DNA of 64,000 nucleotides, taken from the IMG/VR virus record IMGVR_UViG_3300028654_000001, positions 186,001-250,000 of that record. One strand, written 5' to 3'. The notes under the pieces were generated by a model. That model saw nothing but the letters and a program-made list of their open reading frames with translations, did not search any database and had not been told where the DNA came from. Below, in pieces: positions 7,890-63,557 of this stretch. Within the stretch, counting starts at the first letter, position 1. Each line of letters begins with the position of its first letter. A program made the position numbers and the translations under genes.

Positions 7890-7910
7890 CTTATAGCCAG
7901 GTAAGAGGGT

Positions 7911-8645
7911 ATGTCTTCAGATCTCGAACTAGTAGAGCGAGTCAAGCGACGCTTCTTGGCTCATCAAGATCGCGCTAGTCGACGTCTAATTCCATTCGAT
8001 ATACTCAAAGTAAGCGAGTTAGCCAGAGAGATTACAGAAGAAGCTCTTGACTACTTGGAGCATCGTATCGACCCTGGTTCAACTCTAGGTTCAAGTGTAC
8101 GACCTAATGCCATTTGTGCATCTAAAATCATCAACCTGAAGACTGTCAAAGGGGATGACGTTGACTTCCTAGTTCAGGTTAGAGTTGGAAAGACCGCTCA
8201 TGGCGATAAAGCTACTCACGGGTACTATGATCATAGAGACAACACCATCGTAATTTACCTATCACCTTGGTTGAACTCAGACGATCTAAATGAGACTCGT
8301 AAGTACGATATTGTGAATGAGAACAAGAGTGTACTCATTCATGAAGTGACCCATGCCCTCGATGTCATTGACAACTACAAAAAGGAAGAGGGCACTGCTT
8401 ATTACAACAACCCTCATGAGATACGAGCATTCACCAGACAGATTGTTGATGAAGCTAGTAGGGTGTTGAAGGGTCTTCGCCTCACCTCACGAGCACTGAA
8501 GAGGCCTATGCCTCAAGGGTCTAAACTAGTAGAAGCGCTACTTGATGGATCAAAGACGTGGCGTGAGATTAAGAATAACTTGAACGACGCTAGCAACAAG
8601 TACATTCGTCAAGTGCTCGTCAATGAACTAGACCTCGTGGTGTAA
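7911..8645 (+). CDS. zincin-like metallopeptidase with N-terminal RVxxRF motif
   Basis: LIHEVTHALD (HExxH) and downstream YYNNPHEIRA. Confidence 0.7.
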   Translation: MSSDLELVERVKRRFLAHQDRASRRLIPFDILKVSELAREITEEALDYLEHRIDPGSTLGSSVRPNAICASKIINLKTVKGDDVDFLVQVRVGKTAHGDKATHGYYDHRDNTIVIYLSPWLNSDDLNETRKYDIVNENKSVLIHEVTHALDVIDNYKKEEGTAYYNNPHEIRAFTRQIVDEASRVLKGLRLTSRALKRPMPQGSKLVEALLDGSKTWREIKNNLNDASNKYIRQVLVNELDLVV

Positions 8646-8653
8646 CCATAAGG

Positions 8654-9286
8654 ATGACGAGATACGGTGACTGGTCTCAGACCCTGACGGGTCGTCGATT
8701 CTATGTGTTTGACCCTCACCCGGATGACATCTTCATTGAGGACATTGCAGGATCAAGCTCTAAGATATGTCGTTTTAACGGTCACTCAACAGTTTTCTAC
8801 TCTGTGGCTCAGCATTGCGTTGTTGGTAGTTATATTATCGAAGAACGAACCAAGAACTTGCTGCTAGCCTTTGGGTTCTTGCTCCATGACTCAGGGGAGC
8901 CTTACGTTGGAGACATGACCCGACCTCTGAAGCTGATGCCAGAGATGGAAGCTTACCGGAATGCCGAACACAATATCAACCAAGTCCTAGCAAAGAAGTT
9001 CAAGGTTGATCTAACAGATCCTATCATCAAAGAAGTAGATGATGAGATGCTTGCCACTGAGCGAAAATACTTCATGGTTCCACTTGAAGGGTGGCACCTA
9101 AGGCGAGAACCACTGGACATCAAACTCAAACCGTGGACTTGGCAGAAATCTCAACGAGAGTACCTCAATCGATACTACGAGCTGTGTCTCCGATTGGATG
9201 GGTTCCCCAAGGTGGCCACCACCATTCTCAAGCACACTAAGTTGCTTAAGCTGTCAAACATAGCCTTCTCGTCAAGGAGTGGTTGA
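8654..9286 (+). CDS. HD-domain 5'-deoxynucleotidase (YfbR/YfdR-like)
   Basis: CRFNGH, YSVAQH, LLHDSGEPYVGD, D..MLATE motifs. Confidence 0.88.
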   Translation: MTRYGDWSQTLTGRRFYVFDPHPDDIFIEDIAGSSSKICRFNGHSTVFYSVAQHCVVGSYIIEERTKNLLLAFGFLLHDSGEPYVGDMTRPLKLMPEMEAYRNAEHNINQVLAKKFKVDLTDPIIKEVDDEMLATERKYFMVPLEGWHLRREPLDIKLKPWTWQKSQREYLNRYYELCLRLDGFPKVATTILKHTKLLKLSNIAFSSRSG

Positions 9287-9516
9287 TGTCAAAAGCTTCT
9301 CGTAACAAGAAAGTTGCGTCTGTAAAGACGGTAGGCACTAACGATGTGGGGCTGAAGAAGATTAGTCAGATTGAGTTCCCACAGGCGTGGTTGGAAGCTC
9401 GAGACCGTGATCCTAGTCTACCAGAGACACCCCCGGATGGGATACCAGAGGAGGCCAAGCGGGTCATAACCATTCTTGTTCGCCAAGTGCTCAAACTGGA
9501 ATACGAATGGTCATAG
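9283..9516 (+). CDS. hypothetical protein
   Basis: Start overlaps the stop of the HD gene. Confidence 0.55.
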   Translation: MMSKASRNKKVASVKTVGTNDVGLKKISQIEFPQAWLEARDRDPSLPETPPDGIPEEAKRVITILVRQVLKLEYEWS

Positions 9517-9858
9517 GGGGCTCTTGAGAACTCTCATAATCAAGGATTCAAGGTCTTTGATATGGAACGGCTTTTCTAGTATGAATGGAAAACCCTTTTT
9601 CCCTGCCCAACCTGTTGTCAGAATAAATAGGTTCGTCAACTCAGGGTGATTCGTCTTGATCCAATCATAGAGGGAATCTGCATTCCCATCTGGCAGGCTG
9701 TAATCAGAGATAACTAAGTCGAAAGACTCCGTACTCAGCACTGTCTTAGTTTCAAGCAAGGAGCCAGTACTTCGCACTTCAAAACCATCCGCAGATAGGA
9801 TGGTTGTGAATAACCTCCGAACAACCGGCTCATCTTCGACTAAAAGTATGCGGGTCAC
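9511..9858 (-). CDS. single-domain response regulator (REC/CheY-like)
   Basis: ILLVEDE, DLVISD (phospho-Asp), LPDG, TG and KPF motifs. Confidence 0.9.
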   Translation of the reverse strand: MTRILLVEDEPVVRRLFTTILSADGFEVRSTGSLLETKTVLSTESFDLVISDYSLPDGNADSLYDWIKTNHPELTNLFILTTGWAGKKGFPFILEKPFHIKDLESLIMRVLKSPL

Positions 9859-9944
9859 TCTCTCATATTTTAGAAGTTGTTTAAGGTGGTTAATGTTACA
9901 CTAGGCCACCAATTCATCAGTGTATTCATAACGGTAGGTTAATC

Positions 9945-10064
9945 GTGGAAGTTCCTGAGAAAGTAGTTTCAATTTGCAGAAGACTCGTACGAGCTGGCCA
10001 TCAAGGTTGGCTTGTAGGGGGTGCAGTGCGTGACTCCATCATGGGGGGGCCAAATCTACGATAG
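9945..10064 (+). pseudogene. 5' remnant of a second CCA-adding enzyme gene
   Basis: Translates VEVPEKVVSICRRLVRAGHQGWLVGGAVRDSIMGG then stops; parallels MKVPEKVHLICSTLKQAGFEAWVVGGAVRDSLLG at 11441. Confidence 0.8.
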
Positions 10065-10399
10065 ATGACCCCTCATTGCCAACTTGATGATTTCAATGAG
10101 AGCGTCAATATGAAATGGCTTGGCCAAAAAGTAAGGAAATCCCTCGACCTCGGGCCACCCTGAGATTACAATGAACCTTTCCTTCATTGCCGGGTACTTA
10201 CCCAGAATCCACTTGTACAGGTCATCAGCAGATCCAGATCCAAGCCTCAAGTCTGAGACAACTAAGTCAATCAGCTCGTTATCTAGGAGTAGCTTGGCTT
10301 CGTCGAGGGTCGAAGCCGCCTCGACGATGTAGCCCGAAGAAAGGTGCAGAACATCTTTCTCAAAATGGGCTTGTCTTCCACCAATAGAACGTGTTTCAT
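10056..10399 (-). pseudogene. second REC-domain gene, frameshifted near 10336-10343
   Basis: MKHVLLVEDKPILRKMFCTFL continues in another frame as SGYIVEAASTLDEAK..DLVVSD..KPF; paralogous to 9511..9858. Confidence 0.8.
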
Positions 10400-10428
10400 A
10401 CTCTTTACTTCAGAGAAAATAGTTATGT

Positions 10429-11403
10429 CTAGGTAGTATCGGTTTGGTAAGACCACTGAAATCCCTTATATACCCTACCACTTTTACATAGTGACCTTAG
10501 GGTCATACCTGAGATACCGCATTTAGTGGTGGCTTCTTTGGAGCTTGAATACAACTCCATAGTATCAAGCCCAACTTTCTGAATCCTACGAACTCTGAAC
10601 TTGGCCATCGGGTAGTGAGCATGAGCATGTCTATTGTTTTCACTCTGAGTCGCCCACTCCAAGTTATCAGCCCTATTGTCTATTTTGTTGAGGTTCTGGT
10701 GGTTCACCGTTAGGTCAAGAGAGGTGAATCCTTCAGGAAGTGGTAAGAATGCTAATGCCACAAGACGATGGACTGAAACCTTGGACCCTGCTAGATCTAC
10801 AGTTAGATATGGGTCACCACTACCGTAGGTTACCCTACCGCCTTTCAATCGGACTCGACCTAGGGATGATACCTCAACAGTTTTGTCATTGAATTGTGTG
10901 TTAGCCCACCTCTCACCGGGTAGCTCTTTAGTAGCGTATGCCCACTTAACTCCATACGCTCCTCGAATCCTACCTTGACACGCTAGCCAGATACGGGAGT
11001 AATCATGCGGGATTGACCTTATTGAGGGCCACTCTTTGATAACCTGACCATTCTGATCAAGCTGTAGGACAGCCCTGGAACTAGTTTTTGATCCTGTTGA
11101 GCGGGCAAGCCTTCTGTGATCTCCAGTAGTTGCCCATTCAAGATTTCCTACTCGATTGTCCTTTGTATTCTGGTTCTTGTGGTGGACGATCATATCCTTT
11201 ATCGGAGAATTCCCTAGAAAAGTAAGTGCAACGAGCCTATGTACATGAATCGTGGTTTTCTTTCCGCCTACTGATAGTACAACACTATGGTACCTACCTG
11301 ATTTAGATCCTCTTAGCACATAACTGTCCGGGTTCCGTACTTGACCAGAATCCGATATCTCATACTTTTGAAAGGGTTCTGGTGCGCTTAGCCACTTTTC
11401 CAT
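10429..11403 (-). CDS. NUMOD4/HNH homing endonuclease with two HNH modules
   Basis: YEISDSGQVR, VHRLVALTF..HHKNQNTKDNRVGNLEW and a second VHRLVALAF..NHQNLNKIDNRADNLEW. Confidence 0.9.
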   Translation of the reverse strand: MEKWLSAPEPFQKYEISDSGQVRNPDSYVLRGSKSGRYHSVVLSVGGKKTTIHVHRLVALTFLGNSPIKDMIVHHKNQNTKDNRVGNLEWATTGDHRRLARSTGSKTSSRAVLQLDQNGQVIKEWPSIRSIPHDYSRIWLACQGRIRGAYGVKWAYATKELPGERWANTQFNDKTVEVSSLGRVRLKGGRVTYGSGDPYLTVDLAGSKVSVHRLVALAFLPLPEGFTSLDLTVNHQNLNKIDNRADNLEWATQSENNRHAHAHYPMAKFRVRRIQKVGLDTMELYSSSKEATTKCGISGMTLRSLCKSGRVYKGFQWSYQTDTT

Positions 11404-11440
11404 TGAATCCCTGCATTGAGTTGGGTACACTGGCCCTGCC

Positions 11441-12793: not shown

Positions 12794-12804
12794 GGCTAAA
12801 CTGA

Positions 12805-15425: not shown

Positions 15426-15428
15426 GTT

Positions 15429-17537: not shown

Positions 17538-17539
17538 GG

Positions 17540-28344: not shown

Positions 28345-29567
28345 GTAGCAGCTGCTATAGCTGATTTCCTGCTTTTACCCCTACGAATTAGGGAGATATT
28401 AGAGTGATGAGTCTTGTATATCTTTGCAAGGTGAGTTCCCGGTAAGGAACTGGCTAGTATCTCCTGAACCTCATTATCTGTAAGTTTGGTGGCATAGTGG
28501 GTTTCACCACGAGGTCGACTCTCAGGGTGCAAACGAGACCCAGAGCGATCCCCACGTGGGACTCGCTCTGGGTTGGTAATAGAACTATGTCTCCCTTTCC
28601 TAGACATATCTATCATATTGTCTAGTTGAGTCCCCTCAAATAAGTGGTCTGGGTTGGCACAGCTCCTATTATCACACTTGTGGAGCGCAAACATTCCTGG
28701 GAGCAACTTACGCCCAAGCTTGGCTTCTAGTACTATACTGGTGACCCTACGTGTCTTTCTATTCACCCCTATCAAACCATACCTGTCATTACTTGAACCA
28801 GTACAAGTCCAACAACGGCCTAATTCCTCACGTAGTGTAGGCCCATTAATGTTCAGGTGCTGGATCAAAACTTCCGCAATTCGCATTCCGTGGAAGTATG
28901 CTGATTGTTCTTTCAAAACTTGAAGCTCCGCTGACACAACTACTTGCGGATTCAGAAGGTGCTTCCAAGTTAAACCCTTACAGATCTTTTGAATACAACT
29001 CTTGTTTACTCCAAACTTAGTGGCAAGCCACTGATAGCTCTCATGACTAATACGAATTTCCTGAATCATGTCTGCAGTGAGCTTAGAGTTCGAATTACCA
29101 GACCCACCCCTACTTTGAAGCACTTGCCTACAACACCTGCCCTTGGTGACCTTATCCACCATATTGTCTCTTGTTGTGCCTTCGAACAAGTGACTCGGTT
29201 CAAAACATGAGGGGTTGTCGCACCTGTGACATGAGAGCATACCAGAAGTAAGAGGGCGTTTTAGCTTGGCTTCCAATACCAAACGACTAGCCTGGTAGTG
29301 ATTTCTACCGATCATTACCCGGTAACGCTCACCGATCCGACTACTAGACTTTTCTAAGCACGGGCCTAAATCCTGTCGTACAACTACCTCAATCAGATTG
29401 TAAGTGATCCGATCCGCCAGAGCACGACCATGATAGATCATGGTCATATTGTAAATGTTTTGGATACTCATTGGCTCTAATAGATAGACATTAAATGAAG
29501 TATATGGTTTAGGGGTACCTAAACCATATACCACACTGCCGATTTTACTACAATGCTTCGGTAACAA
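28341..29567 (-). CDS. HNH endonuclease with tandem HNH modules and HTH-like tails
   Basis: CHRCDNPSCFEPSHL..N..D and LHKCDNRSCANPDHL..N..D; true start probably downstream (~29471-29447). Confidence 0.88.
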   Translation of the reverse strand: MLPKHCSKIGSVVYGLGTPKPYTSFNVYLLEPMSIQNIYNMTMIYHGRALADRITYNLIEVVVRQDLGPCLEKSSSRIGERYRVMIGRNHYQASRLVLEAKLKRPLTSGMLSCHRCDNPSCFEPSHLFEGTTRDNMVDKVTKGRCCRQVLQSRGGSGNSNSKLTADMIQEIRISHESYQWLATKFGVNKSCIQKICKGLTWKHLLNPQVVVSAELQVLKEQSAYFHGMRIAEVLIQHLNINGPTLREELGRCWTCTGSSNDRYGLIGVNRKTRRVTSIVLEAKLGRKLLPGMFALHKCDNRSCANPDHLFEGTQLDNMIDMSRKGRHSSITNPERVPRGDRSGSRLHPESRPRGETHYATKLTDNEVQEILASSLPGTHLAKIYKTHHSNISLIRRGKSRKSAIAAAT

Positions 29568-30561
29568 TCACCCAGAAGTCTGAACACAGGTTTGTGTTCT
29601 TGATGTAGTCATAACTGGCCCAATAATAGCCATTTAGCCCCCAATCAACTCCCCATGAATTGCGTACCAAGAAGGCACCCTTGGAGTTCGCTCTAAAGGG
29701 GTTGATCATGTTATCATTATATCCGACAAGGCATTGCGCGTGTCCGCCTTGGAGTTGCTCAGACGAACTTGGGAGATCCAAGAAGCCCTTAGTAGCCATG
29801 TCCTGGGACATGAAGTAGTCATAAACCTGAAACCCATAACCCACGAGCAAACCAGAGGCAATAGAGGCCTTCATTGTCGCTAGATCACCATCCGTAATAG
29901 AGTGGTAACTAGTGATCTTCTTGGCTGAGGCTGCTGTCCAGATTGCTTGAGGGGGCTTGACCGTAAACTTGGTAATATCATACGGCCAGGATGCCTCATC
30001 TGCGCAACCGTACTGGGCACCAGCTTTGATAGTGTCACGAATTGTCGCCCCTGAGTCCTCATTGACTGTGTTTTCTATAGTCCTAGTAACGTAGTACTCA
30101 AACAACCTGCTGACCTGGATCAGCTTCGTGGGAGTCGGCGTTGGGGTTGGTGTAGGAGTCGGCGTTGGAGCTGGTGTAGGAGTCGGCGTTGGAGCTGGTG
30201 GGGGTGTAACCGTTGTTAGGTAAGAGATCACCCCAGATGCAGATACTGTAATACCAGATACTGTAACCGTTGCCCCTGCTGCCATAGCGGAGCCAACAAT
30301 GGACTTTTTAGCACCCTTGCTGATCTCATCCGCTTCAACCATTCCGGCGAACATATTGGCGGTACAAGATCCAAGTTGCCCTTGATCCTCAATCGTGCTG
30401 CAGCCTGACCTGAGGTCAACAGAAGTAGGGGCTGCTGTTAGCAACCCTTGAGGTAATTTAACTCGGAATGCTTCATCCCGAGCGTCAAAGGTTTGTTTTC
30501 TCCATCCACCAAGGTGAACTTGGCGAACAGAACCGTCATGAGTGTGGTGTGCTCTGAGCAT
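29548..30561 (-). CDS. papain-like C1 cysteine peptidase
   Basis: DQGQLGSCTAN, GGHA, VRNSWG..WG..GY; Pro/Thr insert. Confidence 0.92.
   Translation of the reverse strand: MLRAHHTHDGSVRQVHLGGWRKQTFDARDEAFRVKLPQGLLTAAPTSVDLRSGCSTIEDQGQLGSCTANMFAGMVEADEISKGAKKSIVGSAMAAGATVTVSGITVSASGVISYLTTVTPPPAPTPTPTPAPTPTPTPTPTPTPTKLIQVSRLFEYYVTRTIENTVNEDSGATIRDTIKAGAQYGCADEASWPYDITKFTVKPPQAIWTAASAKKITSYHSITDGDLATMKASIASGLLVGYGFQVYDYFMSQDMATKGFLDLPSSSEQLQGGHAQCLVGYNDNMINPFRANSKGAFLVRNSWGVDWGLNGYYWASYDYIKNTNLCSDFWVIVTEAL
30130..30200 (-). repeat. tandem repeats encoding a PTPTP linker
   Basis: ggagtcggcgttgg unit repeated three times. Confidence 0.8.
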
Positions 30562-30595
30562 ACCCCAGAGGGGTAATAAGTGGATTAGTATCTGA

Positions 30596-31156
30596 CTATT
30601 TTTTCACGTTTGAGCTAACCTCAAAGGCTGCCCACGCCTCACTCAGCCCCATGAGTTCCGGATGGAACCCGAGCTCCAACATCTCATCATAAGCATCGTC
30701 TTTTGGCATATCCCCAGAGAGAACTCGATGTCGACCAATCAAGTACCCAGTTCGGTCATGGCCATGGGTGCAATGAACTAGAACCCCATCCCTCTTCAGG
30801 ATGATGAAATCGGCTTGAGCCACCTTCTCTGGATCAGGCTTTAGAAATGTATTCGTGAAGTCATTGATGATATCCTTGTCCCCATCAGGTTGAATACTCA
30901 GGACGTAGACCCACAACCCAACAGAAGTAGCGCCAGAGTCACTACCCTCGGATTCGAAGTTCAGTTTGACAACTACGTTGATCCCTAGCCCCTTTAGATA
31001 CCTCCAATCATCGATACTCTGAGGCTGCCCTGATCTCCAAACCCCTGGCTTCACCTGAATTAGGTTCGGAATGTTGTGCGAGTAAACTGTCTTTTTCCCG
31101 ATGACAGCTAAGATCCAAATCCAGATAGTGTGAAAGAACTTCTTGATGCTTGCCAT
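30596..31156 (-). CDS. dual-specificity/tyrosine phosphatase
   Basis: VWRSGQP and CX5R loop VHCTHGHDRTG. Confidence 0.9.
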   Translation of the reverse strand: MASIKKFFHTIWIWILAVIGKKTVYSHNIPNLIQVKPGVWRSGQPQSIDDWRYLKGLGINVVVKLNFESEGSDSGATSVGLWVYVLSIQPDGDKDIINDFTNTFLKPDPEKVAQADFIILKRDGVLVHCTHGHDRTGYLIGRHRVLSGDMPKDDAYDEMLELGFHPELMGLSEAWAAFEVSSNVKK

Positions 31157-31185
31157 TCCATGGCATTTTGATAAGAATATTAGTA

Positions 31186-31434
31186 ATGAACCGGTTTACC
31201 CGAATCCTGAGTGAGAGTCACCTGCCCTATGATATGAGGCAAACAAGGATTGTCTACCTCAAGCTATACGATGATTGTAGGGTAGGGGACCCCGGAGTTA
31301 GAGATACACTCAACCCATGTGACTACTTCAAATATGGTACCGCCAGCGGTGATTGTGAATCCGATGGCCACTACATGTGCAAGGAATGTAAGTGTCTGAC
31401 ACCACTCAAGGCAGGGCGAGCACTTTCAGAGTAG
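31186..31434 (+). CDS. small Cys-rich protein with degenerate N-terminal tag (NRFTRIL)
   Basis: C..CESDGHYMCKEC; start taken at the internal Met. Confidence 0.55.
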   Translation: MNRFTRILSESHLPYDMRQTRIVYLKLYDDCRVGDPGVRDTLNPCDYFKYGTASGDCESDGHYMCKECKCLTPLKAGRALSE

Positions 31435-31951
31435 GCTCAATGTGGGTTGAGGATAAACCCCTTGCATAGTCGGTCTTGATCAGATGATCCTTCAAGTAAT
31501 CCATATCATCATCATCGTCAAGAATGACAAAATGATCGACTGGATTCCGGTCCATCCACTCTTGGATCTCGTGCCCTCGACAGGTATGGTCCCACCGATC
31601 TAGGTTGGTGGCCGTCATATCAACGATATCGCCTTGAAACCCCTTGAACTTCAGTATCCTTTCAAGGGCTTCCAAAGGATGACTGTATCTCCACGAAGAT
31701 GAGATCACTACTTTAGCCCCAGACTTAGCTAGGATCTCATTAAGAACAACGACTGCCTTTGTGTCGATGCTGAGGATACTATTTAGGATTGTCGACCGAG
31801 GACAAGGTGGATCAAAGAGATATCCAAGGTCACACGCTAATTCGAACTCAACTGGATTCGGAGTGGTGTCCGCTTTGATAGTCTTTAGGTGCTTTGATGA
31901 GTTGAGTACCCCGTCCAGATCAAGAAATAGTATACTAGTGTACTGTGCCAT
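31406..31951 (-). CDS. HAD-superfamily phosphatase (Swiss-Army-knife RNA-repair HAD type)
   Basis: FLDLDGVLN, ISSSWR, RGHEI..W, FVILDD. Confidence 0.88.
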   Translation of the reverse strand: MAQYTSILFLDLDGVLNSSKHLKTIKADTTPNPVEFELACDLGYLFDPPCPRSTILNSILSIDTKAVVVLNEILAKSGAKVVISSSWRYSHPLEALERILKFKGFQGDIVDMTATNLDRWDHTCRGHEIQEWMDRNPVDHFVILDDDDDMDYLKDHLIKTDYARGLSSTHIEPTLKVLALP

Positions 31952-32003
31952 CTAGTAATCAAGTACACCTCACATCAGAAAGTTTTTATGACAAACACTT
32001 GGC

Positions 32004-32141
32004 ATGAAGACTATAATTGTTACAGTGCTACTTTCCTGCTCTTTACTTAGTTGCTCAAAAACCAAAGCACCTGAAAGCCCAGTAACCGCTCAAACACAAA
32101 GGTCTGATGCTGATGCTGGTGCTGACGCTGACGTTGAGTAA
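32004..32141 (+). CDS. small lipoprotein (45 aa, below the ORF-track cutoff)
   Basis: MKTIIVTVLLSCSLLS-C signal peptide and lipobox. Confidence 0.6.
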   Translation: MKTIIVTVLLSCSLLSCSKTKAPESPVTAQTQRSDADAGADADVE

Positions 32142-35597: not shown

Positions 35598-35931
35598 AAC
35601 CCCACTTATCGATCTACCTACCGTGAGTAAGGGAAGACGGTTGGTTCAGGTCATCCTGGCCATACTAAAAACCCATCCCGAGGGGATCACAGAGGTTGGT
35701 CTCCACAAGGATGACTTCTGGATCTTGCTGGACATGCTCGGGTATTCATGTTCAACTGCAGTCGTGACCCTGCACAAGGTCAAGGTGTTTACTGATAATA
35801 CCAAGCAGGATATGCTTAGTATCCGAGCAAGTGGTGGTAGTTCCAAGGTCTTTATCGAGGATATCTGGGTGATCCTACATCCAGAAGAGGAAACCCGACT
35901 TCACCGCGTACTGAGGGAGGGAGTAATTTGA
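35590..35931 (+). CDS. hypothetical protein with TRLHR tag variant
   Basis: Ends ETRLHRVLREGVI. Confidence 0.7.
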   Translation: MIETPLIDLPTVSKGRRLVQVILAILKTHPEGITEVGLHKDDFWILLDMLGYSCSTAVVTLHKVKVFTDNTKQDMLSIRASGGSSKVFIEDIWVILHPEEETRLHRVLREGVI

Positions 35932-36680: not shown

Positions 36681-36718
36681 TAGTTACCACTACACCGGTG
36701 TAAGTGGTAACTAATGCC
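36676..36718. promoter_or_regulatory. palindromic divergent promoter region (two back-to-back GGTGTA motifs)
   Basis: ggcattagttaccactacacc|ggtgtaagtggtaactaatgcc; perfect inverted repeat except one extra A. Confidence 0.7.
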
Positions 36719-43782: not shown

Positions 43783-44343
43783 CTACACCAAAAATGGAAA
43801 GCGTACTCTAGCTTGCACTAACTTACGATATAGAGCTTCTTTACCAGGCATTGAGAACGGTAGCGTGGTGAATATCTTGTCGTCACCAGAGTCACCACCC
43901 CACAGTACCATCTCGTATGCGGCCCATTCAAATGGTCCAACAGCCACTGACTCTATGGGCTCTTCTGCGTAAGCTAGACACACATGAGGCTTGTAAGTTG
44001 GGTACTTCTTAGAGTACCCAACTTTTGCTTTATCCAAAGAACTGCATAGATCCTCTTGAAAACTCATTAACTCTGAGCTAACAACAGATCCAATGATTGG
44101 AACACCCTCATCGCCTTTCGGAAAGCAGATAACCTCTTCAATGAGTAGTTGAATAGGTTTGGTGCGAGCTGCCACTTCATAGGCCACTACAATAGCTTTT
44201 GAGATGTGATCAATAGGAACTTTACTGCCCAAGTGTACGCAGGTTATGTGTTTTTCGTCCCGAGGTACGGGCTCTCCAGGAACCTGAATCTGGCTCAGGA
44301 GACGCGATACTTCGTGAGGAACTTTAATCCCGATGAAGGCCAT
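43783..44343 (-). CDS. 2H phosphoesterase (LigT/Acb1-like)
   Basis: KHITC and YKPHVCLAY histidine motifs. Confidence 0.85.
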   Translation of the reverse strand: MAFIGIKVPHEVSRLLSQIQVPGEPVPRDEKHITCVHLGSKVPIDHISKAIVVAYEVAARTKPIQLLIEEVICFPKGDEGVPIIGSVVSSELMSFQEDLCSSLDKAKVGYSKKYPTYKPHVCLAYAEEPIESVAVGPFEWAAYEMVLWGGDSGDDKIFTTLPFSMPGKEALYRKLVQARVRFPFLV

Positions 44344-44402
44344 TCACTACCTCAACTTGATAAGAGGAATTTCTCACTCTAACTTCAGGTGTAATAAACG
44401 AC

Positions 44403-48865: not shown

Positions 48866-49114
48866 CTAATTTTTTGGCAAACTTCTAACTGGGAAGACCG
48901 TTAGTGCCGGCAAGTCTTTTGATTCAACCCATTCTTCAAAGGCTCGATATAATGCAGTAAACGCGATTGGAGAGGCTCGTTCTAGGGTCAACCGAATCCT
49001 GAGAACTTGAAGATCTTCAGTTGGTATCCAATTGCGACGAACTACTTGCTCAGCAAAGTCCCCAATTAGGTCAGTTCGATATCGTTGAACCGATAGCCAA
49101 GAGAGGAAGTTCAA
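48866..49114 (-). CDS. YozE SAM-like protein
   Basis: FLSWL..RTDLIGDFA..P...AF.EW. Confidence 0.65.
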   Translation of the reverse strand: MNFLSWLSVQRYRTDLIGDFAEQVVRRNWIPTEDLQVLRIRLTLERASPIAFTALYRAFEEWVESKDLPALTVFPVRSLPKN

Positions 49115-49821
49115 GCCTCGCCCCTTTTCGGCTCGGTTAGAGAAAAGATTCGTTCTCTATGAAGTTGGAAGATAGGCTTCACAGGGTCCTTCTTCGCCCC
49201 TTCATGATCTATCCAACGTAACCACTTTGCCTCATCTGATCTGAAACTAGTAGCACACCACTTAGCTAGAAGCTCAGCTGACCCGAAAGTTGTGGAAACT
49301 GGACGACCCTCAGGGGGTTCGAACTCCCAAAGCTGCCAAGCATCTCCAGACGGAGGTTCAATTGGTTGCCATTCTTCGTATAGGTTGATCCCTCTGTAGA
49401 GGCGCTGAACAGCTGGGTTCTGATTGGGGATTGTTTGAGTTCCTGCGCAGAGATCACACAAACCCCATACACCTCTTCGTCGAGCTCGGATCTCAATGAG
49501 GTAGGACCTAATCAATGGGGAGTCAGCTGACCAATTTCTATTCTGAAGTTTGGTAACTTCAGTCAAGTCCATTCCACTTTGCTTAGCTGCTACGAGTTCT
49601 AGTTTTGTAAGTCGACTAGCCCATTTCTTGAATGTGAAGTACAGTTTAGTACACTCTTCGTTCAGCCCAGTACCGTGACAGAGGGGACATGGAATTGGAC
49701 CAGGCCACGGGTTGATGTACCCGTTCCAAACCTGACCTATAGGCCAATCGAATTCAAATGGAACTCGTTTTATGAACCATCGCTGACTCACAACTGGCTT
49801 CAAATATAAGGGCTTTTTCAA
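49111..49821 (-). CDS. hypothetical protein with DnaJ-type CxxCxG zinc motifs
   Basis: CPLCHGTG, CDLCAGT; EPPSG..WQLWE..EG.P.S. Confidence 0.75.
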   Translation of the reverse strand: MKKPLYLKPVVSQRWFIKRVPFEFDWPIGQVWNGYINPWPGPIPCPLCHGTGLNEECTKLYFTFKKWASRLTKLELVAAKQSGMDLTEVTKLQNRNWSADSPLIRSYLIEIRARRRGVWGLCDLCAGTQTIPNQNPAVQRLYRGINLYEEWQPIEPPSGDAWQLWEFEPPEGRPVSTTFGSAELLAKWCATSFRSDEAKWLRWIDHEGAKKDPVKPIFQLHRERIFSLTEPKRGEA

Positions 49822-51102: not shown

Positions 51103-51654
51103 GTGATTCCTTTTATCTGCAAGTCCGATAGGAGAACTTCAATGGCTATGCCGAGTCAGGAACTGTCAGAACTAAAGTCTAGAGTACTCGTTGCAGTACG
51201 AACTGGAACCAACATTGCTCGAGTATCGGACTACCTCATCAGTCTCATTCGAGAAGCTGGATCCTCCTTACCAGAGCGGCCAAAGAGCGATACTGACACT
51301 GAGTACTTGTACTCAGTAATCATTGCAATCGAGTCGAAGAGGAAGAATCAAGAGTTATCACAGGTTCAGGTGACAGAAGATCCTGAGCCAACCATTGTAG
51401 AAGATGTAGCTCCTGTCATCCCAGAACCTATCAAGGCGACAGAATCTGAAGATGTTACTGTCACTCCAGAACCTATCGAACTGGAAGAGACTCCTGTTGC
51501 CTCAGAGATCACAACAGTAGAAGAACTGGACTCAGCAGAAGTTAATCCAACTGACAACAAAGAAGCGGTGGAGTTAGCTCCAGAACACTCCGAAAGTACC
51601 CACAAGACCAAGGGTGGGAAACAACCTAAGAAGAATAAGAAGCAACTCTCTTAG
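51103..51654 (+). CDS. hypothetical protein with acidic low-complexity region and basic tail
   Basis: AGGAG precedes the likely start near 51142. Confidence 0.7.
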   Translation: MIPFICKSDRRTSMAMPSQELSELKSRVLVAVRTGTNIARVSDYLISLIREAGSSLPERPKSDTDTEYLYSVIIAIESKRKNQELSQVQVTEDPEPTIVEDVAPVIPEPIKATESEDVTVTPEPIELEETPVASEITTVEELDSAEVNPTDNKEAVELAPEHSESTHKTKGGKQPKKNKKQLS

Positions 51655-52373
51655 GCTACTGTCTCAGCCCCATTCGAATCATCTTCAATGTTGAATGGGG
51701 CTTGGATCACATCATCAAGACTCTGATCCATTGTGAGTGCTACCAAGTTTGAGATCCGAGTCTTCTGATCATCGGTTAGTTCTGGAGGAGTCGTATAGTC
51801 CACATTCAATTGCGAAATGGTGTGGAACACCGATGTTAGGGTCTTAGTATAGGCCAACTCATCGGCCGTATAGTATCCTTGGGAACGCAGTAGGTGAGAG
51901 AACTGAGCTGGATCACCAGTAAGCACCGCTGGCCATGACCTAGCAAACCGCTTGTTGAGTAACCCTATGTAGTCGACAGCCCCATCAACTAGAGTGTTGA
52001 AGGCCCTAAATCGACATCCTGGGTGCTTTGGGTAGAACCAGATGATGGACGTCCCATCACCACGATCCTGAGTCACCCTGGCAGTAGCAGGGGCCGCAGT
52101 GGCCATTGCATGAGCTGTGGCTGTCTTCAGAATCTCGTTGCAGGCAAAGTAGCAATAGTCGTGGCCATCCCCCTCGACCGACTTCACATTTCCGAAATTA
52201 AAATTCCACATTGCCTTACACCAGCCAGTTTCCAAAGCAACCTGGCTAGCTAACACCCAAACGGACTCTTTTTTTGGGACTTCTCCAAACAAGTGAATCC
52301 AAGCCTCGTACAGAGCTCGAATAAACAGTTCTTTGCTGACAGGAGTCTTCTCGGCAATGAGTTCGGAGGGCAT
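51651..52373 (-). CDS. glucosaminidase/FlgJ-like (GH73) peptidoglycan hydrolase
   Basis: QVALETGW, N.NFG.VK, FRAF, GYYTA..Y. Confidence 0.75.
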   Translation of the reverse strand: MPSELIAEKTPVSKELFIRALYEAWIHLFGEVPKKESVWVLASQVALETGWCKAMWNFNFGNVKSVEGDGHDYCYFACNEILKTATAHAMATAAPATARVTQDRGDGTSIIWFYPKHPGCRFRAFNTLVDGAVDYIGLLNKRFARSWPAVLTGDPAQFSHLLRSQGYYTADELAYTKTLTSVFHTISQLNVDYTTPPELTDDQKTRISNLVALTMDQSLDDVIQAPFNIEDDSNGAETVA

Positions 52374-52430
52374 ACCCAAGAGCGGGTATAGATAGACTAC
52401 CTATCGGTTTGACATAAGAGAGGCCCTCTT

Positions 52431-56693: not shown

Positions 56694-56726
56694 GGAATTT
56701 CACCGAAGTGCTTCAAATAAATGAGC

Positions 56727-56761: not shown

Positions 56762-56775
56762 TTATGTTATGCAAA

Positions 56776-57744: not shown

Positions 57745-57800
57745 GAGAGACCTCTACTTTCCTTCATGTTTACTGTTAGAACAACTCGTTGTGGTCTGAT

Positions 57801-58046
57801 CTAATCTTCATCGTCTCTAAGAATCCGATCGAACCGAGTACTCCCAAGAAGCGTTGTACTCGGTTTACTAGACACCGATGGCACTTCATCGGTGTCTAGA
57901 ATTCGATCGAATCGAGTTGGTCGAGAAGTACTTTGGGTATCTGGTACTTGACTCCGAATAGGCTCTACACCCGCTTGACTTTTAGGCTCTTGTTTTCTAC
58001 GAGACATAAGAGTGTAGAAGTCATCTGTCCAAAAACCGCCGCCCAT
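57801..58046 (-). CDS. mini-protein: copy of the vWA N-terminus + two TRFDR tags
   Basis: MGGGFWTDDFY vs MGGGSWSHDFY; PTRFDRIL and STRFDRIL. Confidence 0.8.
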   Translation of the reverse strand: MGGGFWTDDFYTLMSRRKQEPKSQAGVEPIRSQVPDTQSTSRPTRFDRILDTDEVPSVSSKPSTTLLGSTRFDRILRDDED

Positions 58047-58053
58047 AAGCCTC

Positions 58054-59442: not shown

Positions 59443-59451
59443 CTTGTCCTC

Positions 59452-60183: not shown

Positions 60184-60524
60184 TTGTCAATCCCCAGAAA
60201 CTTCTTAGTAATTGATGCAGCCTCAACCATTGGAATCTTTCTGTGTGAAACGGTTCTGTTGAGCTTTGGCCTGAAGTACACGATGCAGGCCATCTCTAGC
60301 AGGTCTAAGTCAGCCTCTGGGTCAACTCTTCGTATGAAGATCTGATCGAATTCCTTTGACTTATGCCTGACTATAGCTGAATGAACGCTAATTGATTGAC
60401 CTATATACATCAACTCCCCTAATAGGAATAGAAAATAAATCACAGAGGTTCTATACACCTCGACTTCTTCAAGGAGTTTTGCCTCAACCTCCTCGGTTAC
60501 TACCTTCCGTATGATCTTGGCCAT
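60180..60524 (-). CDS. GIY-YIG-like small protein
   Basis: VIYFL..MYIGQS..H..E..I..P.LN. Confidence 0.6.
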   Translation of the reverse strand: MAKIIRKVVTEEVEAKLLEEVEVYRTSVIYFLFLLGELMYIGQSISVHSAIVRHKSKEFDQIFIRRVDPEADLDLLEMACIVYFRPKLNRTVSHRKIPMVEAASITKKFLGIDK

Positions 60525-60538
60525 CCGTGGTCGGATAC

Positions 60539-60559
60539 TTATAGTAGAAGTGACAATAA
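60539..60559. promoter_or_regulatory. candidate NrtR operator
   Basis: TTATAGT-N7-ACAATAA imperfect palindrome (GT-N7-AC core) just upstream of the nrtR-nadV operon. Confidence 0.65.
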
Positions 60560-60656
60560 GTCAAGGTAGAAAAGAATATTTCTGTAACCAGTTGTAATCA
60601 TTACGGTTAACCAAATGACTCTCACATTTTTGACATACTTGGTGTAAAGGTGCCAA

Positions 60657-61118
60657 ATGCCAGTGCAAAGGCGAGGGCGTGCGGTTGACTTTGTAAAGGA
60701 AATCCTGAACCACGAGCACAGAGACTGGGTTCGATCCGATGACCCAAGCACTTCCAGTTGGGGCTTCGAGTGTCGGATTTGCAAATCCCGCTACCTAATA
60801 GCCATCGAAGCCTTCCGATACCAAGGGGGCGACCGCTACTCGAATGCTCTCCGAGATTGTGCAATGGATCCGAGAAAGGATCCATTGGAGACAGTTCTTG
60901 GGTTCGATTGTATCGCCTGTCATACGACTGAGGGCGTCAAACTGGAACCTTCAAGAACTCAATATGGTACAACGTATCCTCGAACGAGGTTCGAACGAAT
61001 ACTTGACCCTGAGCCAGAAGATCCTAACATCGACATCCCTCTCTGCCGAAGTTGCGCAGAGGATCATCATTCGTACTGGGATGAAATGTGGCAGATGGTT
61101 CGATATGATCAGATGTGA
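60657..61118 (+). CDS. Zn-finger protein with internal TRFER tag
   Basis: CRIC, CIAC, CRSC..H; YPRTRFERIL; GGTGTA 10 nt upstream. Confidence 0.75.
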   Translation: MPVQRRGRAVDFVKEILNHEHRDWVRSDDPSTSSWGFECRICKSRYLIAIEAFRYQGGDRYSNALRDCAMDPRKDPLETVLGFDCIACHTTEGVKLEPSRTQYGTTYPRTRFERILDPEPEDPNIDIPLCRSCAEDHHSYWDEMWQMVRYDQM

Positions 61119-61468
61119 GGAAGCAAATGAAAGAAGTTAGGTATTTCACCTGCGAAACTGTCAGTGAGGCTAAGTGGTCCCTAATCGCAGAGGATCACCG
61201 ACCTCGCCTTGATGTCCGCTTCTTCGGACTGAGACGGGACATCGAGGGTCGCCCCGAGGAAGAGGTCTACCAGGTCAAAGACCCAAACTATGCAAAACTT
61301 TACCAGGAGATCAACAACCAAACTCCTGGCAGCTACGTCTTCAGGAAGTTCAAACTTACCCAAGCCGAGTGGTGCTGGATTCGCGGCGTCATCCACAGCC
61401 TGATGTGTGACAACGCTACCTCGGTACCAATCGAGGCTATCTTAGTGGGGGACTCAAAGGCTCTTTAG
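61115..61468 (+). CDS. hypothetical protein
   Basis: Coupled to the previous gene. Confidence 0.65.
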   Translation: MRKQMKEVRYFTCETVSEAKWSLIAEDHRPRLDVRFFGLRRDIEGRPEEEVYQVKDPNYAKLYQEINNQTPGSYVFRKFKLTQAEWCWIRGVIHSLMCDNATSVPIEAILVGDSKAL

Positions 61469-62236
61469 TCCTTCAACCATCTTGTCGACCCGAGCCCAAA
61501 GATCGGTGAGGGTCGAGTTGTTGTCCAATACCCAATCGAAGTCATCGTCATGTAGGGAAAGTAAATCATTCTCACTCTTGTGATCTGGGGATACTTTGAT
61601 CTCTTTGACCTTCCGCTTCACACGGACAAGCTTTCCACCAGCTTTGCGAACGGCCTCAGCTTCATTCTGATATCGTAGGTCGGTGAGTACCACGTCTGTA
61701 CGAGGTACTCCAATGAGGACCGGGCCTCCCTTGATCCCAGAGCAATGAAAGTTTGGGTTACTTGAGTGACGGGCTTCAGCAAGTTGGTAGAGTCCCAGCT
61801 TCTGGTCGTACCCAAACTTGCCGGTAGCCAGCCTGTTGGTCATACGGATAGCGTACTCCGCCCAGATAGGCTCGTAGCACTCATTGCGCCCCCACCCGTC
61901 ACCCAAGGTTTGGAGAGCGTGCCTGACCGTCAAGCAAACTTGAGTATGGTCCTCAGCGGAATGAACTAAGGGACTTCCTCCGAAGATAGTTCTGGGGTAC
62001 CTCGGATCTTCCTTGTTCCGATTCTCACTCGGACCCCACAACTGGTCATCAGTGAAATCAAACACATCTTTCAGGATACGCTTAAGGGGATCAGCAAAAG
62101 CAATCGGAACATAGTTGTGGGCTTGAACTAGCTGTCTAGCAGCTTCGTCCTTACCCGCACCGGCGCTACCTCTCTTACGGGAGAGCCCATTGAACCAACC
62201 AGCCTCAGTGGTGAGACCCGAGATAGCTATCAACAT
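61454..62236 (-). CDS. deoxynucleoside monophosphate kinase
   Basis: GAGKD, FADPLK, R..LQ.LG..WGR, DLRY.NE, H.SE. Confidence 0.88.
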   Translation of the reverse strand: MLIAISGLTTEAGWFNGLSRKRGSAGAGKDEAARQLVQAHNYVPIAFADPLKRILKDVFDFTDDQLWGPSENRNKEDPRYPRTIFGGSPLVHSAEDHTQVCLTVRHALQTLGDGWGRNECYEPIWAEYAIRMTNRLATGKFGYDQKLGLYQLAEARHSSNPNFHCSGIKGGPVLIGVPRTDVVLTDLRYQNEAEAVRKAGGKLVRVKRKVKEIKVSPDHKSENDLLSLHDDDFDWVLDNNSTLTDLWARVDKMVEGLKSL

Positions 62237-62245
62237 GTACTCGGA

Positions 62246-63493
62246 CTACACCGAGTAAGGGACGAGGCCTTCGTCTGAGTTCAATATAGACCAAAGGATC
62301 ATTCCTAGTGTAGACCAATCTACACTAGTCTTATCTATAGACGAGGAATCATTGACCAAGTCCCTAAGCTTGATTACCTCAACGTAGGTTTTCTCTGTGT
62401 CAACCTCTATACCGAAAGTCTCTCCGGATTGAGCTATTCCCATAAGGTGGTCTCGCTCAGCCTTAGTGATCCTCCCGTAGAACAACGTGCTTGTGTGAGC
62501 TGATAGAGTACCTGCCAGCTGCAAGGTACCCAGCTCCTTGAGTCGAGCTGGGTCTATGGTGAAAGAGGTTTCCTCGTGGAGCTCTTCGAGGGCCACTTTC
62601 TTGGTCTCCCCTTTATCTTCCTTGGCGCTCCCACCTGGTAGCTCAATAATATACCCTGTATTAGTCCTAGCCGGGCTTCTAAACTCTTTTACCAAGAGAA
62701 CCTCAGTATCCCACAGATGCTTGAGACCCTCTTCCTCAGGACGGTAGAGAAGCGCTACAGATGAGACGTCTGAACGTCCGAACACGAACTCATTTTTCTT
62801 GGCCCTTTGTTCGGCTGCAATCCAAACATTGACATGAAGGCACCAGCAAAAGACTTTGTCCATCTGCTGTCCCACCCGGAATGTCCAAAGGACTCGAGCA
62901 CTGTCCAGGCGGTTGCCAGCGGCCGTCTGGGACTTATACCACCTCTGGAAGGTGGTGTCCTTCCAGACGAGCAAGGGTACCTGAGCTTCGCCGCCGACTC
63001 GTAGGGAACCCTCTCCCAGGCTCTTGACGGCATCCTCGAGGGTGGTGTCCAGTGTCGAGTAGTTGGCCACCTTCAACTTGGTAGCCATGTGCTGAATGTA
63101 TTGAACCTTCTGAGCATCAGGTGGGGTACCAAGAATCACCTTCCCTGTGTCTGCCCAGACTCCGAATTCGACATTGGTTGTAAGACCTGGGAGAGTATTC
63201 AGATCTCGAGGAATCCAGAAAACAATCACATCAGCCATATTCAGTGCGGAGGTTTCCCACTCAACCTGGTCGACGTAATCTCCGAACACTTTTCCATCAC
63301 GAGGTTCCGGAACAAATACGTGACCATCGAACCCAAGCTTCTCAAGTAGTTCGAGGGCTTCGGGTCTCCAACTCTTGGTTTCCTTATCCCTAGGTGTAGG
63401 CCCCGCCAAAAACAGACTCTTCACAACCTCTGTGGGAAGATCCTCTTTAGCATAGACCACCTTCATGCCCGACTTCCATGTCTCTGGATTCAT
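62246..63493 (-). CDS. nucleoside deoxyribosyltransferase-like domain fused to a Nudix hydrolase
   Basis: LFLAGPTPR..SWR..WE..ADVIVFW..TTNVEFG; EFRSP..ELPGGS..ALEELHEET. Confidence 0.8.
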   Translation of the reverse strand: MNPETWKSGMKVVYAKEDLPTEVVKSLFLAGPTPRDKETKSWRPEALELLEKLGFDGHVFVPEPRDGKVFGDYVDQVEWETSALNMADVIVFWIPRDLNTLPGLTTNVEFGVWADTGKVILGTPPDAQKVQYIQHMATKLKVANYSTLDTTLEDAVKSLGEGSLRVGGEAQVPLLVWKDTTFQRWYKSQTAAGNRLDSARVLWTFRVGQQMDKVFCWCLHVNVWIAAEQRAKKNEFVFGRSDVSSVALLYRPEEEGLKHLWDTEVLLVKEFRSPARTNTGYIIELPGGSAKEDKGETKKVALEELHEETSFTIDPARLKELGTLQLAGTLSAHTSTLFYGRITKAERDHLMGIAQSGETFGIEVDTEKTYVEVIKLRDLVNDSSSIDKTSVDWSTLGMILWSILNSDEGLVPYSV

Positions 63494-63557
63494 GGTCCAG
63501 AATTACACCGGAAGTTGGGTACCTAGTTTACTAAACCCCTTATCGGAGTGTTCAAGC

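What the first reader, a model, noticed from the sequence alone, without database searches (positions are those of the whole stretch)
7890..63543. Second upstream motif ACTAA-N4-CTTAT-N14-ATG marks a separate, probably late, gene class
Exact ACTAA-N4-CTTAT-N14-ATG precedes the C1 peptidase (ATAAG 30576), the phosphatase (ATAAG 31171) and the J-domain gene (CTTAT 63539). Variants precede the GH73 hydrolase (TCTAT, N14), the small lipoprotein (TTTAT, N14), the zincin (CTTAT 7890, N16) and the 2H phosphoesterase (N16). None of these genes has GGTGTA or a TRFER tag, which suggests a distinct temporal class (late or virion/lysis associated).
Basis: partly seen in the sequence, partly recalled or inferred. 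Interest (0 to 1): 0.6.

Follow-up and report, generated by a model that had tools for sequence, protein, structure and literature searches.

The report
Minor CTTAT promoter-like class in megaphage
A short DNA signal (TAAT-N3-CTTAT) sits 14-16 bases before about twenty ribosome-site-less genes of an uncultivated 512-kb soil phage and is most likely a third, minor promoter class; this is ordinary phage gene regulation, but it helps map how a giant phage schedules its genes.

Summary
The three exact ACTAA-N4-CTTAT-N14-ATG sites are real (0 expected) and are the only three in the whole 512,571-bp phage genome.

They are the best-matching members of a small class. CTTAT is the top-ranked of all 1,024 pentamers at 14-16 nt before called starts: 13 genes against 1.4 expected, p = 4e-9. 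The same peak appears in three related phage fragments. The 21-site consensus is mTAAT-N3-CTTAT-N9-12-RGT-ATG. It is strand-specific, lacks a Shine-Dalgarno, and often fills the short gap opposite a divergent GGTGTA gene or just after a tRNA.

Orthologous upstream regions mostly keep the core while the flanks drift.

The phage encodes three sigma-70-like ORFs, and Pfam searches found no RNA polymerase of its own. My best reading (about 0.55) is a compact promoter without a -35 element, read by host polymerase with a phage sigma, giving very short leaders.

"Late" is only partly supported. All six tail-fibre-like paralogues and the capsid operon head carry core variants. Portal, terminase and baseplate genes do not, and the exact sites precede enzymes (C1 peptidase, phosphatase, J-protein). 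No RNA data exist. This is a new member of a known kind, of moderate interest.

The parts
30559..30589 (-). Exact site 1: ACTAA-N4-CTTAT-N14-ATG in the 34-nt gap before the C1 peptidase gene (29548-30561, -); GGGT directly before the ATG
   Evidence: The orthologue in relative G001 (91% aa identity) keeps ACTAATCCACTTGT-N14-GGGT-ATG.
31154..31184 (-). Exact site 2 before the tyrosine/dual-specificity phosphatase gene (30596-31156, -). It lies at the end of a ~250-nt non-coding stretch.
   Evidence: A sigma-70-like consensus match (TAGACA-16-TATCAT) lies about 45 nt further upstream.
63530..63560 (+). Exact site 3 before the 435-aa J-domain gene (63558 to beyond the window end). It lies in a 64-nt gap shared with a divergent GGTGTA gene (62246-63493, -).
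   Evidence: G002 orthologues (83% identity) keep AATAAACCCCTTAT-N14-ATG. The G003 orthologue (70%) has lost it and has GAGGAGG instead.
7890..7913 (+). Core-only site: CTTAT-N16-ATG before the weak zincin-like gene (7911-8645). CTTAT directly follows the stop codon of the upstream gene; GGGT precedes the ATG.
   Evidence: CTTAT is kept in the G002 orthologue (80%) while the spacer diverges.
44341..44364 (-). Core site: TTCCTCTTATCAAG, N16, before the 2H phosphoesterase / Acb1-like gene (43783-44343, -). Divergent from a GGTGTA gene across a 59-nt gap.
   Evidence: TTCyTCTTATCAAG is kept in the G001 (76%) and G002 (88%) orthologues.
49789..49810 (-). Core site: TTGAAAAAGCCCTTATAT, N14, GTG start of a 226-aa gene of unknown function (49111-49791, -). 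Divergent from a GGTGTA gene across a 61-nt gap.
   Evidence: TTGAAAAAGyCyTTATAT is kept in G001 (69%) and G002 (85%).
52371..52392 (-). Variant core: TCTAT-N14-GGGT-ATG before the GH73-like gene (51651-52373, -).
   Evidence: Glucosaminidase E = 1.9e-5, below the Pfam cut-off. A G001 gene with a matching N-terminus (MPSELVAQKTPV against MPSELIAEKTPV) has CTTAT-N13-GGGT-ATG.
31985..32006 (+). Variant core: TTTAT-N14-ATG before a 45-aa lipoprotein-like ORF (32004-32141). Divergent from the GGTGTA-led HAD gene (31406-31951, -).
   Evidence: Weakest member: short ORF and no orthologue found.
35605..35625 (+). Doubtful member: CTTAT-N13-GTG, an internal candidate start of a 102-aa ORF (35623-35931).
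   Evidence: It is not the first start of the ORF, has no RGT, and has no orthologue evidence.

Best explanation
The motif is the strongest form of a minor, third promoter class of this phage. The phage shows three upstream signals, each at a fixed short distance from start codons that lack a Shine-Dalgarno sequence.

- Class A: a ~35-nt signal (GGTGAGATC-N7-CTCAaaCGTArTACTGAGC-ATG) on about 40 small genes.
- Class B: YYGGTGTA-N9-12-ATG on about 90 genes.
- Class C, this finding: mTAAT-N3-CTTAT-N9-12-RGT-ATG on about 20 genes.

I infer that class C is a compact promoter without a -35 element. CTTAT would act as the -10-like element and the upstream (C)TAAT as an adjacent extension. Host RNA polymerase would read it with one of the three sigma-70-like proteins the phage encodes, two of which show only region 2. 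Transcription would start a few bases before the ATG, near the conserved RGT, giving mRNAs with leaders of roughly 3-8 nt. That would explain why the motif-to-ATG distance is fixed.

Shown here: the position, strand bias and enrichment; conservation in orthologous leaders; absence of an SD; occupancy of gaps too short to hold another promoter; presence of sigma-like ORFs; and no phage RNA polymerase found by Pfam.

Inferred only: that it is a promoter, where transcription starts, which sigma reads it, and when it fires. I lean weakly towards late expression.
For: 1. Enrichment. CTTAT ranks first of 1,024 pentamers at N14-16 (13 against 1.42, p = 4e-9). 6 of 18 bipartite hits are start-proximal, against a mean of 0.19 in 479 controls.
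2. Orientation. CTTAT[AG] occurs 21 times sense against 5 antisense in co-directional intergenic DNA.
3. Replication. Three related fragments, G001-G003, show the same peak: 10 sites at N14-16 against about 0.3 per position elsewhere.
4. Footprints. The core is kept in orthologous leaders of the peptidase, J-domain, 226-aa, zincin-like and 2H genes while flanks diverge. Where it is lost (G003 J-domain gene), an SD appears instead.
5. Slot. 9 of 19 CTTAT genes face a divergent neighbour. The window examples have 59-64-nt gaps that also hold the reverse GGTGTA. Two sites begin within 2 nt of a tRNA 3' end, as GGTGTA sites do.
6. GGTGTA behaves as a DNA-level signal. It forms back-to-back palindromes in a 34-nt gap and shows 62 sense against 7 antisense, so a promoter-at-fixed-distance layout is the house style of this genome.
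7. Three Sigma70_r2 ORFs were found, one of which also has region 4. No T7-type, beta or beta-prime RNA polymerase was found by Pfam, with positive controls for beta and beta-prime.
8. No Rfam family and no RNA structure beyond shuffles (z = -0.07 to -0.69).
Against: No transcript 5' ends are available: all 18 public runs holding this DNA are DNA metagenomes.

The class is small and loose. A free EM search did not hold on it: it drifted to class A or to base composition.

Raw CTTAT-N14-15-ATG counts in relatives are not above a reversed control. The strict bipartite pattern occurs 0-1 times in relatives. The more distant 406-kb relative G004 keeps GGTGTA (78 against 5) but not class C (1 against 1).

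Some members have SD-like purines between CTTAT and the ATG (zincin-like and 2H genes).

The phosphatase has a sigma-70-like consensus match 45 nt further upstream that could be its real promoter.

The 4-nt gap between half-sites fits no standard -35/-10 geometry. Divergent phage RNA polymerases can escape Pfam.
Confidence: 0.55

Rival explanations
1. An RNA-level signal. The motif would lie inside a longer leader and act on the mRNA, as a site for a translational activator or repressor, for an unconventional ribosome-recruiting factor, or for an endonuclease that trims polycistronic or tRNA-containing transcripts to give short-leader mRNAs.
For: The distance is fixed relative to the start codon rather than to any mapped transcription start. 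RGT is conserved directly before the ATG. The genes lack an SD, so some other initiation signal is needed. Several sites directly follow tRNA genes in a 42-tRNA array that is probably transcribed as long precursors. The peptidase lies only 34 nt after the phosphatase and could be co-transcribed with it.
Against: CTTAT is not complementary to an anti-SD and lies too far from the ATG for one. There is no shared RNA structure and no Rfam match. In 59-64-nt divergent gaps the transcript would have to begin inside the opposite gene, and no further conserved element is seen there. The companion GGTGTA signal forms back-to-back palindromes, which points to DNA-level recognition.
Confidence: 0.17
2. 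An operator for a phage transcription factor. The near-direct repeat CTAAT-N3-CTTAT would be bound by a regulator (activator or repressor) that overlays a weak promoter read by some other sigma, defining a regulon rather than a sigma class.
For: The two half-sites resemble each other (CTAAT and CTTAT, 8 nt start to start). Only a subset of CTTAT sites has the upstream half (6-8 of about 21). The products form a loose functional set: peptidase, phosphatase, ADP-ribosyltransferase-like, J-protein, Acb1-like. An alternative sigma-70-like promoter lies upstream of the phosphatase.
Against: No candidate regulator was identified. An 8-nt repeat period is unusual for tandem binders. The core alone, without the upstream half, is still position-specific and conserved. 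The fixed distance to the ATG is explained better by a transcription start.
Confidence: 0.15
3. No shared function. The three exact sites would be coincidence or local copying, and the wider CTTAT peak would be a by-product of AT-rich gene starts or of paralogous upstream regions.
For: There are only three exact sites, all within 34 kb. Two of them are adjacent genes. The six tail-fibre-like genes are paralogues, so part of their shared upstream core could be inherited. The motif is scarce in relatives.
Against: 0 expected in shuffles. The N4 and N14 spacers differ completely between sites, so they are not copies. CTTAT is the top-ranked pentamer genome-wide at this position (p = 4e-9). There is strand bias, a replicated peak in relatives and core-specific conservation in orthologues.
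Confidence: 0.05

Closest known systems
T4 late promoters (TATAAATA at -10, read by host RNA polymerase with the region-4-less sigma gp55); from general knowledge
   Same: A compact AT-rich element with no -35 partner, marking a phage gene class. The phage supplies small sigma-like proteins: here three Sigma70_r2 ORFs, two without detectable region 4. Core variants precede tail-fibre-like genes and the capsid operon.
   Different: The consensus differs (mTAAT-N3-CTTAT). No gp55/gp33/sliding-clamp link was tested. Late timing is unproven. The main structural block does not use it at gene starts. Here the motif lies at a fixed 14-16 nt from an SD-less ATG, whereas T4 late mRNAs have ordinary leaders with SDs.
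Sigma cascades of SPO1 (gp28, gp33/34) and of phiEco32-like phages (phage sigma for middle/late genes; PMC8948821 listed, not read in full)
   Same: Several phage-encoded sigma-family proteins together with several distinct promoter consensus classes in one genome, and no phage RNA polymerase.
   Different: Those promoters have -35/-10 pairs with about 17-bp spacing and experimentally mapped starts. Here the half-sites are 3-4 nt apart, and nothing links a given sigma to a given class.
Promoters of leaderless or short-leader genes (lambda cI from PRM; widespread in Actinobacteria and Deinococcus; PMC3160421 and PMC3898074 listed, not read in full)
   Same: The -10-like element lies at a fixed short distance from the start codon, with no SD between them.
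   Different: For class C the implied leader is a few nucleotides (RGT) rather than zero. Classes A and B fit true leaderless geometry better, with the A of GTA 10-11 nt before the ATG (inference). The host and its translation habits are unknown.
Late promoters of phiKZ/AR9-type jumbo phages read by multisubunit phage RNA polymerases (PMC7598289 and PMC5449584 listed, not read in full)
   Same: A giant phage with short class-specific motifs close to the transcription start.
   Different: No beta or beta-prime homologue was detectable here by Pfam, with positive controls. Sigma-like ORFs are present instead. The consensus is unrelated.

Membership tests
Bacterial/phage promoter (sigma-70-family -10-type element) | Strand-specific location upstream of genes, enriched over chance | tested here: met
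   13 against 1.42 at N14-16, top-ranked of 1,024 pentamers. 21 sense against 5 antisense for CTTAT[AG]. 6 of 18 bipartite hits are start-proximal against 0.19 in controls.
Bacterial/phage promoter (sigma-70-family -10-type element) | A transcript 5' end at a fixed distance (about 6-8 nt) downstream of the element | not testable with these tools
   No RNA run holds this DNA: 18 DNA metagenome runs only.
Bacterial/phage promoter (sigma-70-family -10-type element) | A cognate polymerase or sigma is available | tested here: inconclusive
   Three Sigma70_r2 ORFs at genome 255577-256143 (r2+r4), 77133-77822 (r2) and 484268-485422 (partial r2). No phage RNA polymerase by Pfam. Which sigma reads which class is unknown.
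Bacterial/phage promoter (sigma-70-family -10-type element) | Conservation of the element, but not its flanks, in orthologous upstream regions | tested here: met
   All five window genes with orthologues keep the core or a one-base variant in at least one relative. It is lost in one more distant orthologue, where an SD appears.
Late (structural/lysis) promoter class | Present before structural and lysis genes or at the heads of their operons | tested here: inconclusive
   Present as YYTAT before 6 of 6 tail-fibre-like paralogues, before the gene heading the capsid operon (TTTAT N16) and before the GH73-like gene. Absent before portal, TerL, baseplate and tail-fibre genes. GGTGTA dominates the structural block, 16 against 1.
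Late (structural/lysis) promoter class | Transcripts appear late in infection | not testable with these tools
   Uncultivated phage; no transcriptome.
Shine-Dalgarno ribosome-binding site | Purine-rich complement of the 16S 3' end, 5-10 nt before the start | tested here: not met
   CTTAT is pyrimidine-rich and ends 14-16 nt before the ATG. The genome's real SD signal (AGGAG, about 6-8 nt before the start) appears in other genes.
Structured cis-regulatory RNA (Rfam) | Match to a curated family, or a stable conserved fold | tested here: not met
   0 Rfam matches in the window. Folding z-scores are -0.07 to -0.69, and the motif is unpaired.

The most novel reading that the evidence does not exclude
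Class C is the late promoter of a region-4-less phage sigma. Its enzyme cargo would then be made together with the tail fibres, packaged in the virion and injected as host-takeover or anti-defence effectors, in the way T4 packages Alt. That cargo is the C1 peptidase, the tyrosine phosphatase, a DRAT-like ADP-ribosyltransferase, the J-protein and an Acb1-like 2H phosphodiesterase. The promoter motif would then serve as a sequence tag for finding injected effectors in this megaphage lineage.
Probability: 0.15. Interest if true: 0.6.

Novelty: new member of a known kind. Interest (0 to 1): 0.35.

Why it matters
Huge uncultivated phages have hundreds of genes with no way to order them in time. Sequence-defined promoter classes give a first regulatory map. 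In this genome three signals, each at a fixed distance from an SD-less ATG, together with three sigma-like genes, suggest a sigma cascade with leaderless or near-leaderless mRNAs.

Class C is the smallest class, but it links tail-fibre-like genes with a set of enzymes that look like host-manipulating or anti-defence factors. If it is timed late, those enzymes become candidates for virion-delivered effectors. If it is timed early or middle, they form a takeover regulon.

The motif also corrects start-codon calls; for example, the J-domain gene starts at 63558, not 63465.

Tried and rejected
- Free EM motif discovery on upstream regions locked onto class A, or drifted to base composition once classes A and B were removed (timed out, 18, 24, 25). 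I rejected it as a way to define class C and replaced it with position-anchored k-mer statistics.
- The strict bipartite pattern in five relatives gave 0-1 hits. Raw CTTAT-N14-15-ATG counts without gene calls were no better than a reversed control in relatives. Only gene-anchored counts show the peak.
- The search for RNA runs found none.
- Rfam and RNA folding gave nothing.
- Pfam searches for T7-type polymerase (no positive control rang, so uninformative), beta and beta-prime found nothing. Phage_sheath_1 also found nothing.
- Standard -35/-10 geometry for class C is rejected: nothing is conserved 17 bp upstream of CTTAT.
It is a C-terminal PTRFER motif.
- A literature search found no description of these motifs.
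- The large protein searches, structure prediction and complex prediction were not used because the question did not need them.
- No alternative genetic code was used; the standard code fits.


Full report
**What the DNA is**

The window is bases 186001-250000 of a 512,571-bp IMG/VR virus record with direct terminal repeats, estimated complete. GC is 49% and the standard genetic code fits. My own dicodon-based gene caller gives 719 genes covering 89% of the genome.

Gene content is that of a huge tailed phage:
- NAMPT, a CCA-adding enzyme, adenylosuccinate synthetase, HNH endonucleases and AAA ATPases in the window.
- Portal, large terminase, baseplate, tail fibre, helicases and ribonucleotide reductase in a long minus-strand block at about 275-460 kb.
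- An HK97-type capsid gene at 403571-404440.
- 42 tRNA genes, almost all at 459-480 kb.

The DNA occurs only in rhizosphere and soil DNA metagenomes. The nearest GenBank TerL is an uncultured 485-kb phage (46% identity). The nearest cultured one is an Acidobacteriota phage (29%).

**The observation**

The three exact ACTAA-N4-CTTAT-N14-ATG sites exist at the stated places, against 0 expected. They open the C1 peptidase, phosphatase and J-domain ORFs. They are the only exact matches in the whole genome. None of these genes has a sense-strand GGTGTA or the C-terminal PTRFER tag.

**How the class looks genome-wide**

Upstream regions of this phage carry three distinct signals, all at a fixed distance from start codons that lack a Shine-Dalgarno sequence.

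- Class A is a ~35-nt signal, GGTGAGATC-N7-CTCAaaCGTArTACTGAGC-ATG. It precedes about 40 small genes, mostly at 6-190 kb.
- Class B is YYGGTGTA-N9-12-ATG on about 90 genes. It shows 89 against 9 expected and 62 sense against 7 antisense. It includes back-to-back palindromes in a 34-nt gap.
- Class C is the subject of this finding.

The remaining genes show an ordinary AGGAG signal about 6-8 nt before the start.

For class C, CTTAT is the top-ranked of all 1,024 pentamers ending 14-16 nt before first-called starts: 13 against 1.42 expected, p = 4e-9. This count involves no motif-guided choice of start codon.

Aligning the 21 CTTAT sites at N13-17 shows three conserved parts:
- TAA(T) three to four bases upstream of CTTAT: A in 15 of 21 and 14 of 21 sites, T in 12 of 21.
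- The CTTAT core itself.
- A purine-G-T directly before the start codon: G at -2 in 74% of sites and T at -1 in 68%, against 6% GT across all genes.

CT[AG]A-N4-[CT]TTAT has 18 hits, of which 6 lie 14-15 nt before a start. 479 permuted controls gave a mean of 0.19. Two more sites have an N5 gap, and there are CTTGT and CTTTT variants. CTTAT[AG] is strand-biased in co-directional intergenic DNA, 21 against 5.

**Relatives**

Three IMG/VR fragments share synteny and 69-77% nucleotide identity with this genome: G001 (71 kb), G002 (145 kb) and G003 (229 kb). They share classes A and B. With the same gene caller they show a CTTAT peak at N14-16: 10 sites against a background of about 0.3 per position.

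Orthologous leaders mostly keep the core while the flanks change:
- Peptidase: ACTAATCCACTTGT in G001.
- J-domain gene: AATAAACCCCTTAT in G002.
- 226-aa gene, 2H phosphoesterase gene and zincin-like gene: core kept in one or two relatives each.
- The more distant J-domain orthologue in G003 has lost the motif and has GAGGAGG instead.

A 406-kb relative, G004, keeps class B (78 against 5 in the control) but not class C. Class C is thus a small and fairly lineage-restricted class.

**Mechanism**

I take it to be a promoter, for five reasons.

1. The signal is strand-specific and DNA-position-specific.
2. 9 of 19 CTTAT genes face a divergent neighbour. The window examples have gaps of only 59-64 nt that also hold the neighbour's reverse GGTGTA. 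Nothing else in those gaps is conserved.
3. Class C sites occupy the same slot as GGTGTA. This includes positions within 2 nt of tRNA 3' ends, which suits promoters that need no -35 element.
4. There is no SD, no Rfam match and no RNA fold.
5. The phage encodes three Sigma70_r2 ORFs, one with region 4 and two without. Pfam detects no RNA polymerase of its own.

If the A of CTTAT corresponds to the flipped -11 base of a -10 element, transcription would start about 4-5 nt before the ATG, near the conserved RGT. By the same reckoning classes A and B would be truly leaderless. All of this geometry is inference. No 5'-end data exist.

The rivals are an RNA-level initiation or processing signal, a transcription-factor operator, and chance. 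I weight them 0.17, 0.15 and 0.05.

**Timing**

For it:
- All six members of a paralogous family of large proteins carry CTTAT, TCTAT or CCTAT 14-18 nt before SD-less starts. Their conserved N-terminus matches PHROG tail-fibre and tail-protein N-domains. The rest of their upstream DNA is mostly diverged, and the genes are scattered among early-looking regions, where they would need their own promoter.
- The gene heading the capsid operon has CCTCACTTTAT at N16, though with an SD.
- The GH73-like gene carries the core in two genomes.

Against it:
- Portal, terminase, baseplate and the collagen-like tail-fibre gene have no such motif before their starts.
- GGTGTA is the main sense-strand signal in the structural block.
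- The full bipartite motif precedes enzymes only: C1 peptidase, phosphatase, J-protein, a DRAT-like ADP-ribosyltransferase and unknowns.
- The 2H gene also matches Acb1, a counter-defence type one might expect early.

I put late at a little under one half.

**Comparison with known systems**

In working principle it is closest to T4-type late promoters and to phage sigma cascades (SPO1, phiEco32-like), combined with leaderless-gene promoter geometry. It is not a member of any described consensus. A literature search found no report of these motifs. It is a new member of a known kind.

**Limits**

- Gene calls are my own heuristic, and start codons of non-motif genes are crude.
- Functional labels for the zincin-like and GH73-like genes are below Pfam cut-offs.

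Noticed in passing
genome-wide; in the window e.g. starts at 841 (-), 1945 (-), 3075 (+): Class A: a ~35-nt upstream signal, GGTGAGATC-N7-CTCAaaCGTArTACTGAGC-ATG, on about 40 small genes (median 105 aa), mostly at genome 6-190 kb. Its two blocks lie 17 bp apart, like a -35/-10 pair, with the ATG where transcription would start. This is probably the early class.
   Followed up: partly
genome-wide; window 36685-36708 holds a perfect back-to-back pair: Class B: YYGGTGTA-N9-12-ATG on about 90 genes with no SD. It includes palindromic TACACCGGTGTA serving two divergent genes across a 34-nt gap. It is conserved in relatives, including a 406-kb contig (78 against 5 in the control).
   Followed up: partly
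It may be a shared C-terminal sorting, degradation or interaction signal.
   Followed up: partly
genome 13138 (+), 19699 (+), 61132 (+), 71355 (-), 165979 (-), 511023 (-); outside the window: Six paralogous large proteins (235-992 aa) share an N-terminal ~60-aa module, MTTERFSNQAST... (48-87% identity). It hits PHROG tail-fibre and tail-protein N-domains, followed by different C-terminal parts. This looks like a set of alternative receptor-binding fibres.
   Followed up: partly
genome 459244-479593 and 498602-498674; outside the window: 42 tRNA genes, all on the minus strand, interleaved with small protein genes. ARAGORN also calls a CTA-anticodon (amber-reading) tRNA. No recoding was assumed, and the standard code gives the longest ORF set.
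   Followed up: no
genome 255577-256143 (-), 77133-77822 (+), 484268-485422 (-): Three sigma-70-family ORFs. One is ECF-like with regions 2 and 4, in an operon headed by a GGTGTA site. The other two have region 2 only.
   Followed up: partly
window 7911-7980 (+) and 63558-63630 (+): The zincin-like and J-domain proteins share an N-terminus, M[SA]SDLxL[VI]xRV, and nothing else (BLASTP 10 of 24 identities, E = 0.03). Their G002 orthologues keep it. It may be a short N-terminal signal common to some class C products.
   Followed up: partly
window 43783-44343 (-): The 2H phosphoesterase matches Pfam Acb1 (anti-CBASS; E = 1.9e-5, just under the cut-off) as well as 2_5_RNA_ligase2. It is a possible counter-defence nuclease for cyclic nucleotides.
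   Followed up: no
genome 460734-461924 (-): A 396-aa class C gene with a DRAT-like ADP-ribosyltransferase C-terminal domain (E = 1e-10). It starts 30 nt after tRNA-Arg(tcg).
   Followed up: no
genome 259680-259700 (-): The bases just upstream of the class C site at 259679 resemble the 3' end of tRNA-Arg(tcg), which precedes the class C site at 461951. No tRNA is called there. It may be a tRNA remnant copied together with the promoter.
   Followed up: no
window 63465-63557 (+): The longest ORF of the J-domain gene begins at 63465, but the motif and the orthologue alignments place the real start at 63558. Upstream of that the relatives are non-coding and diverged.
   Followed up: yes
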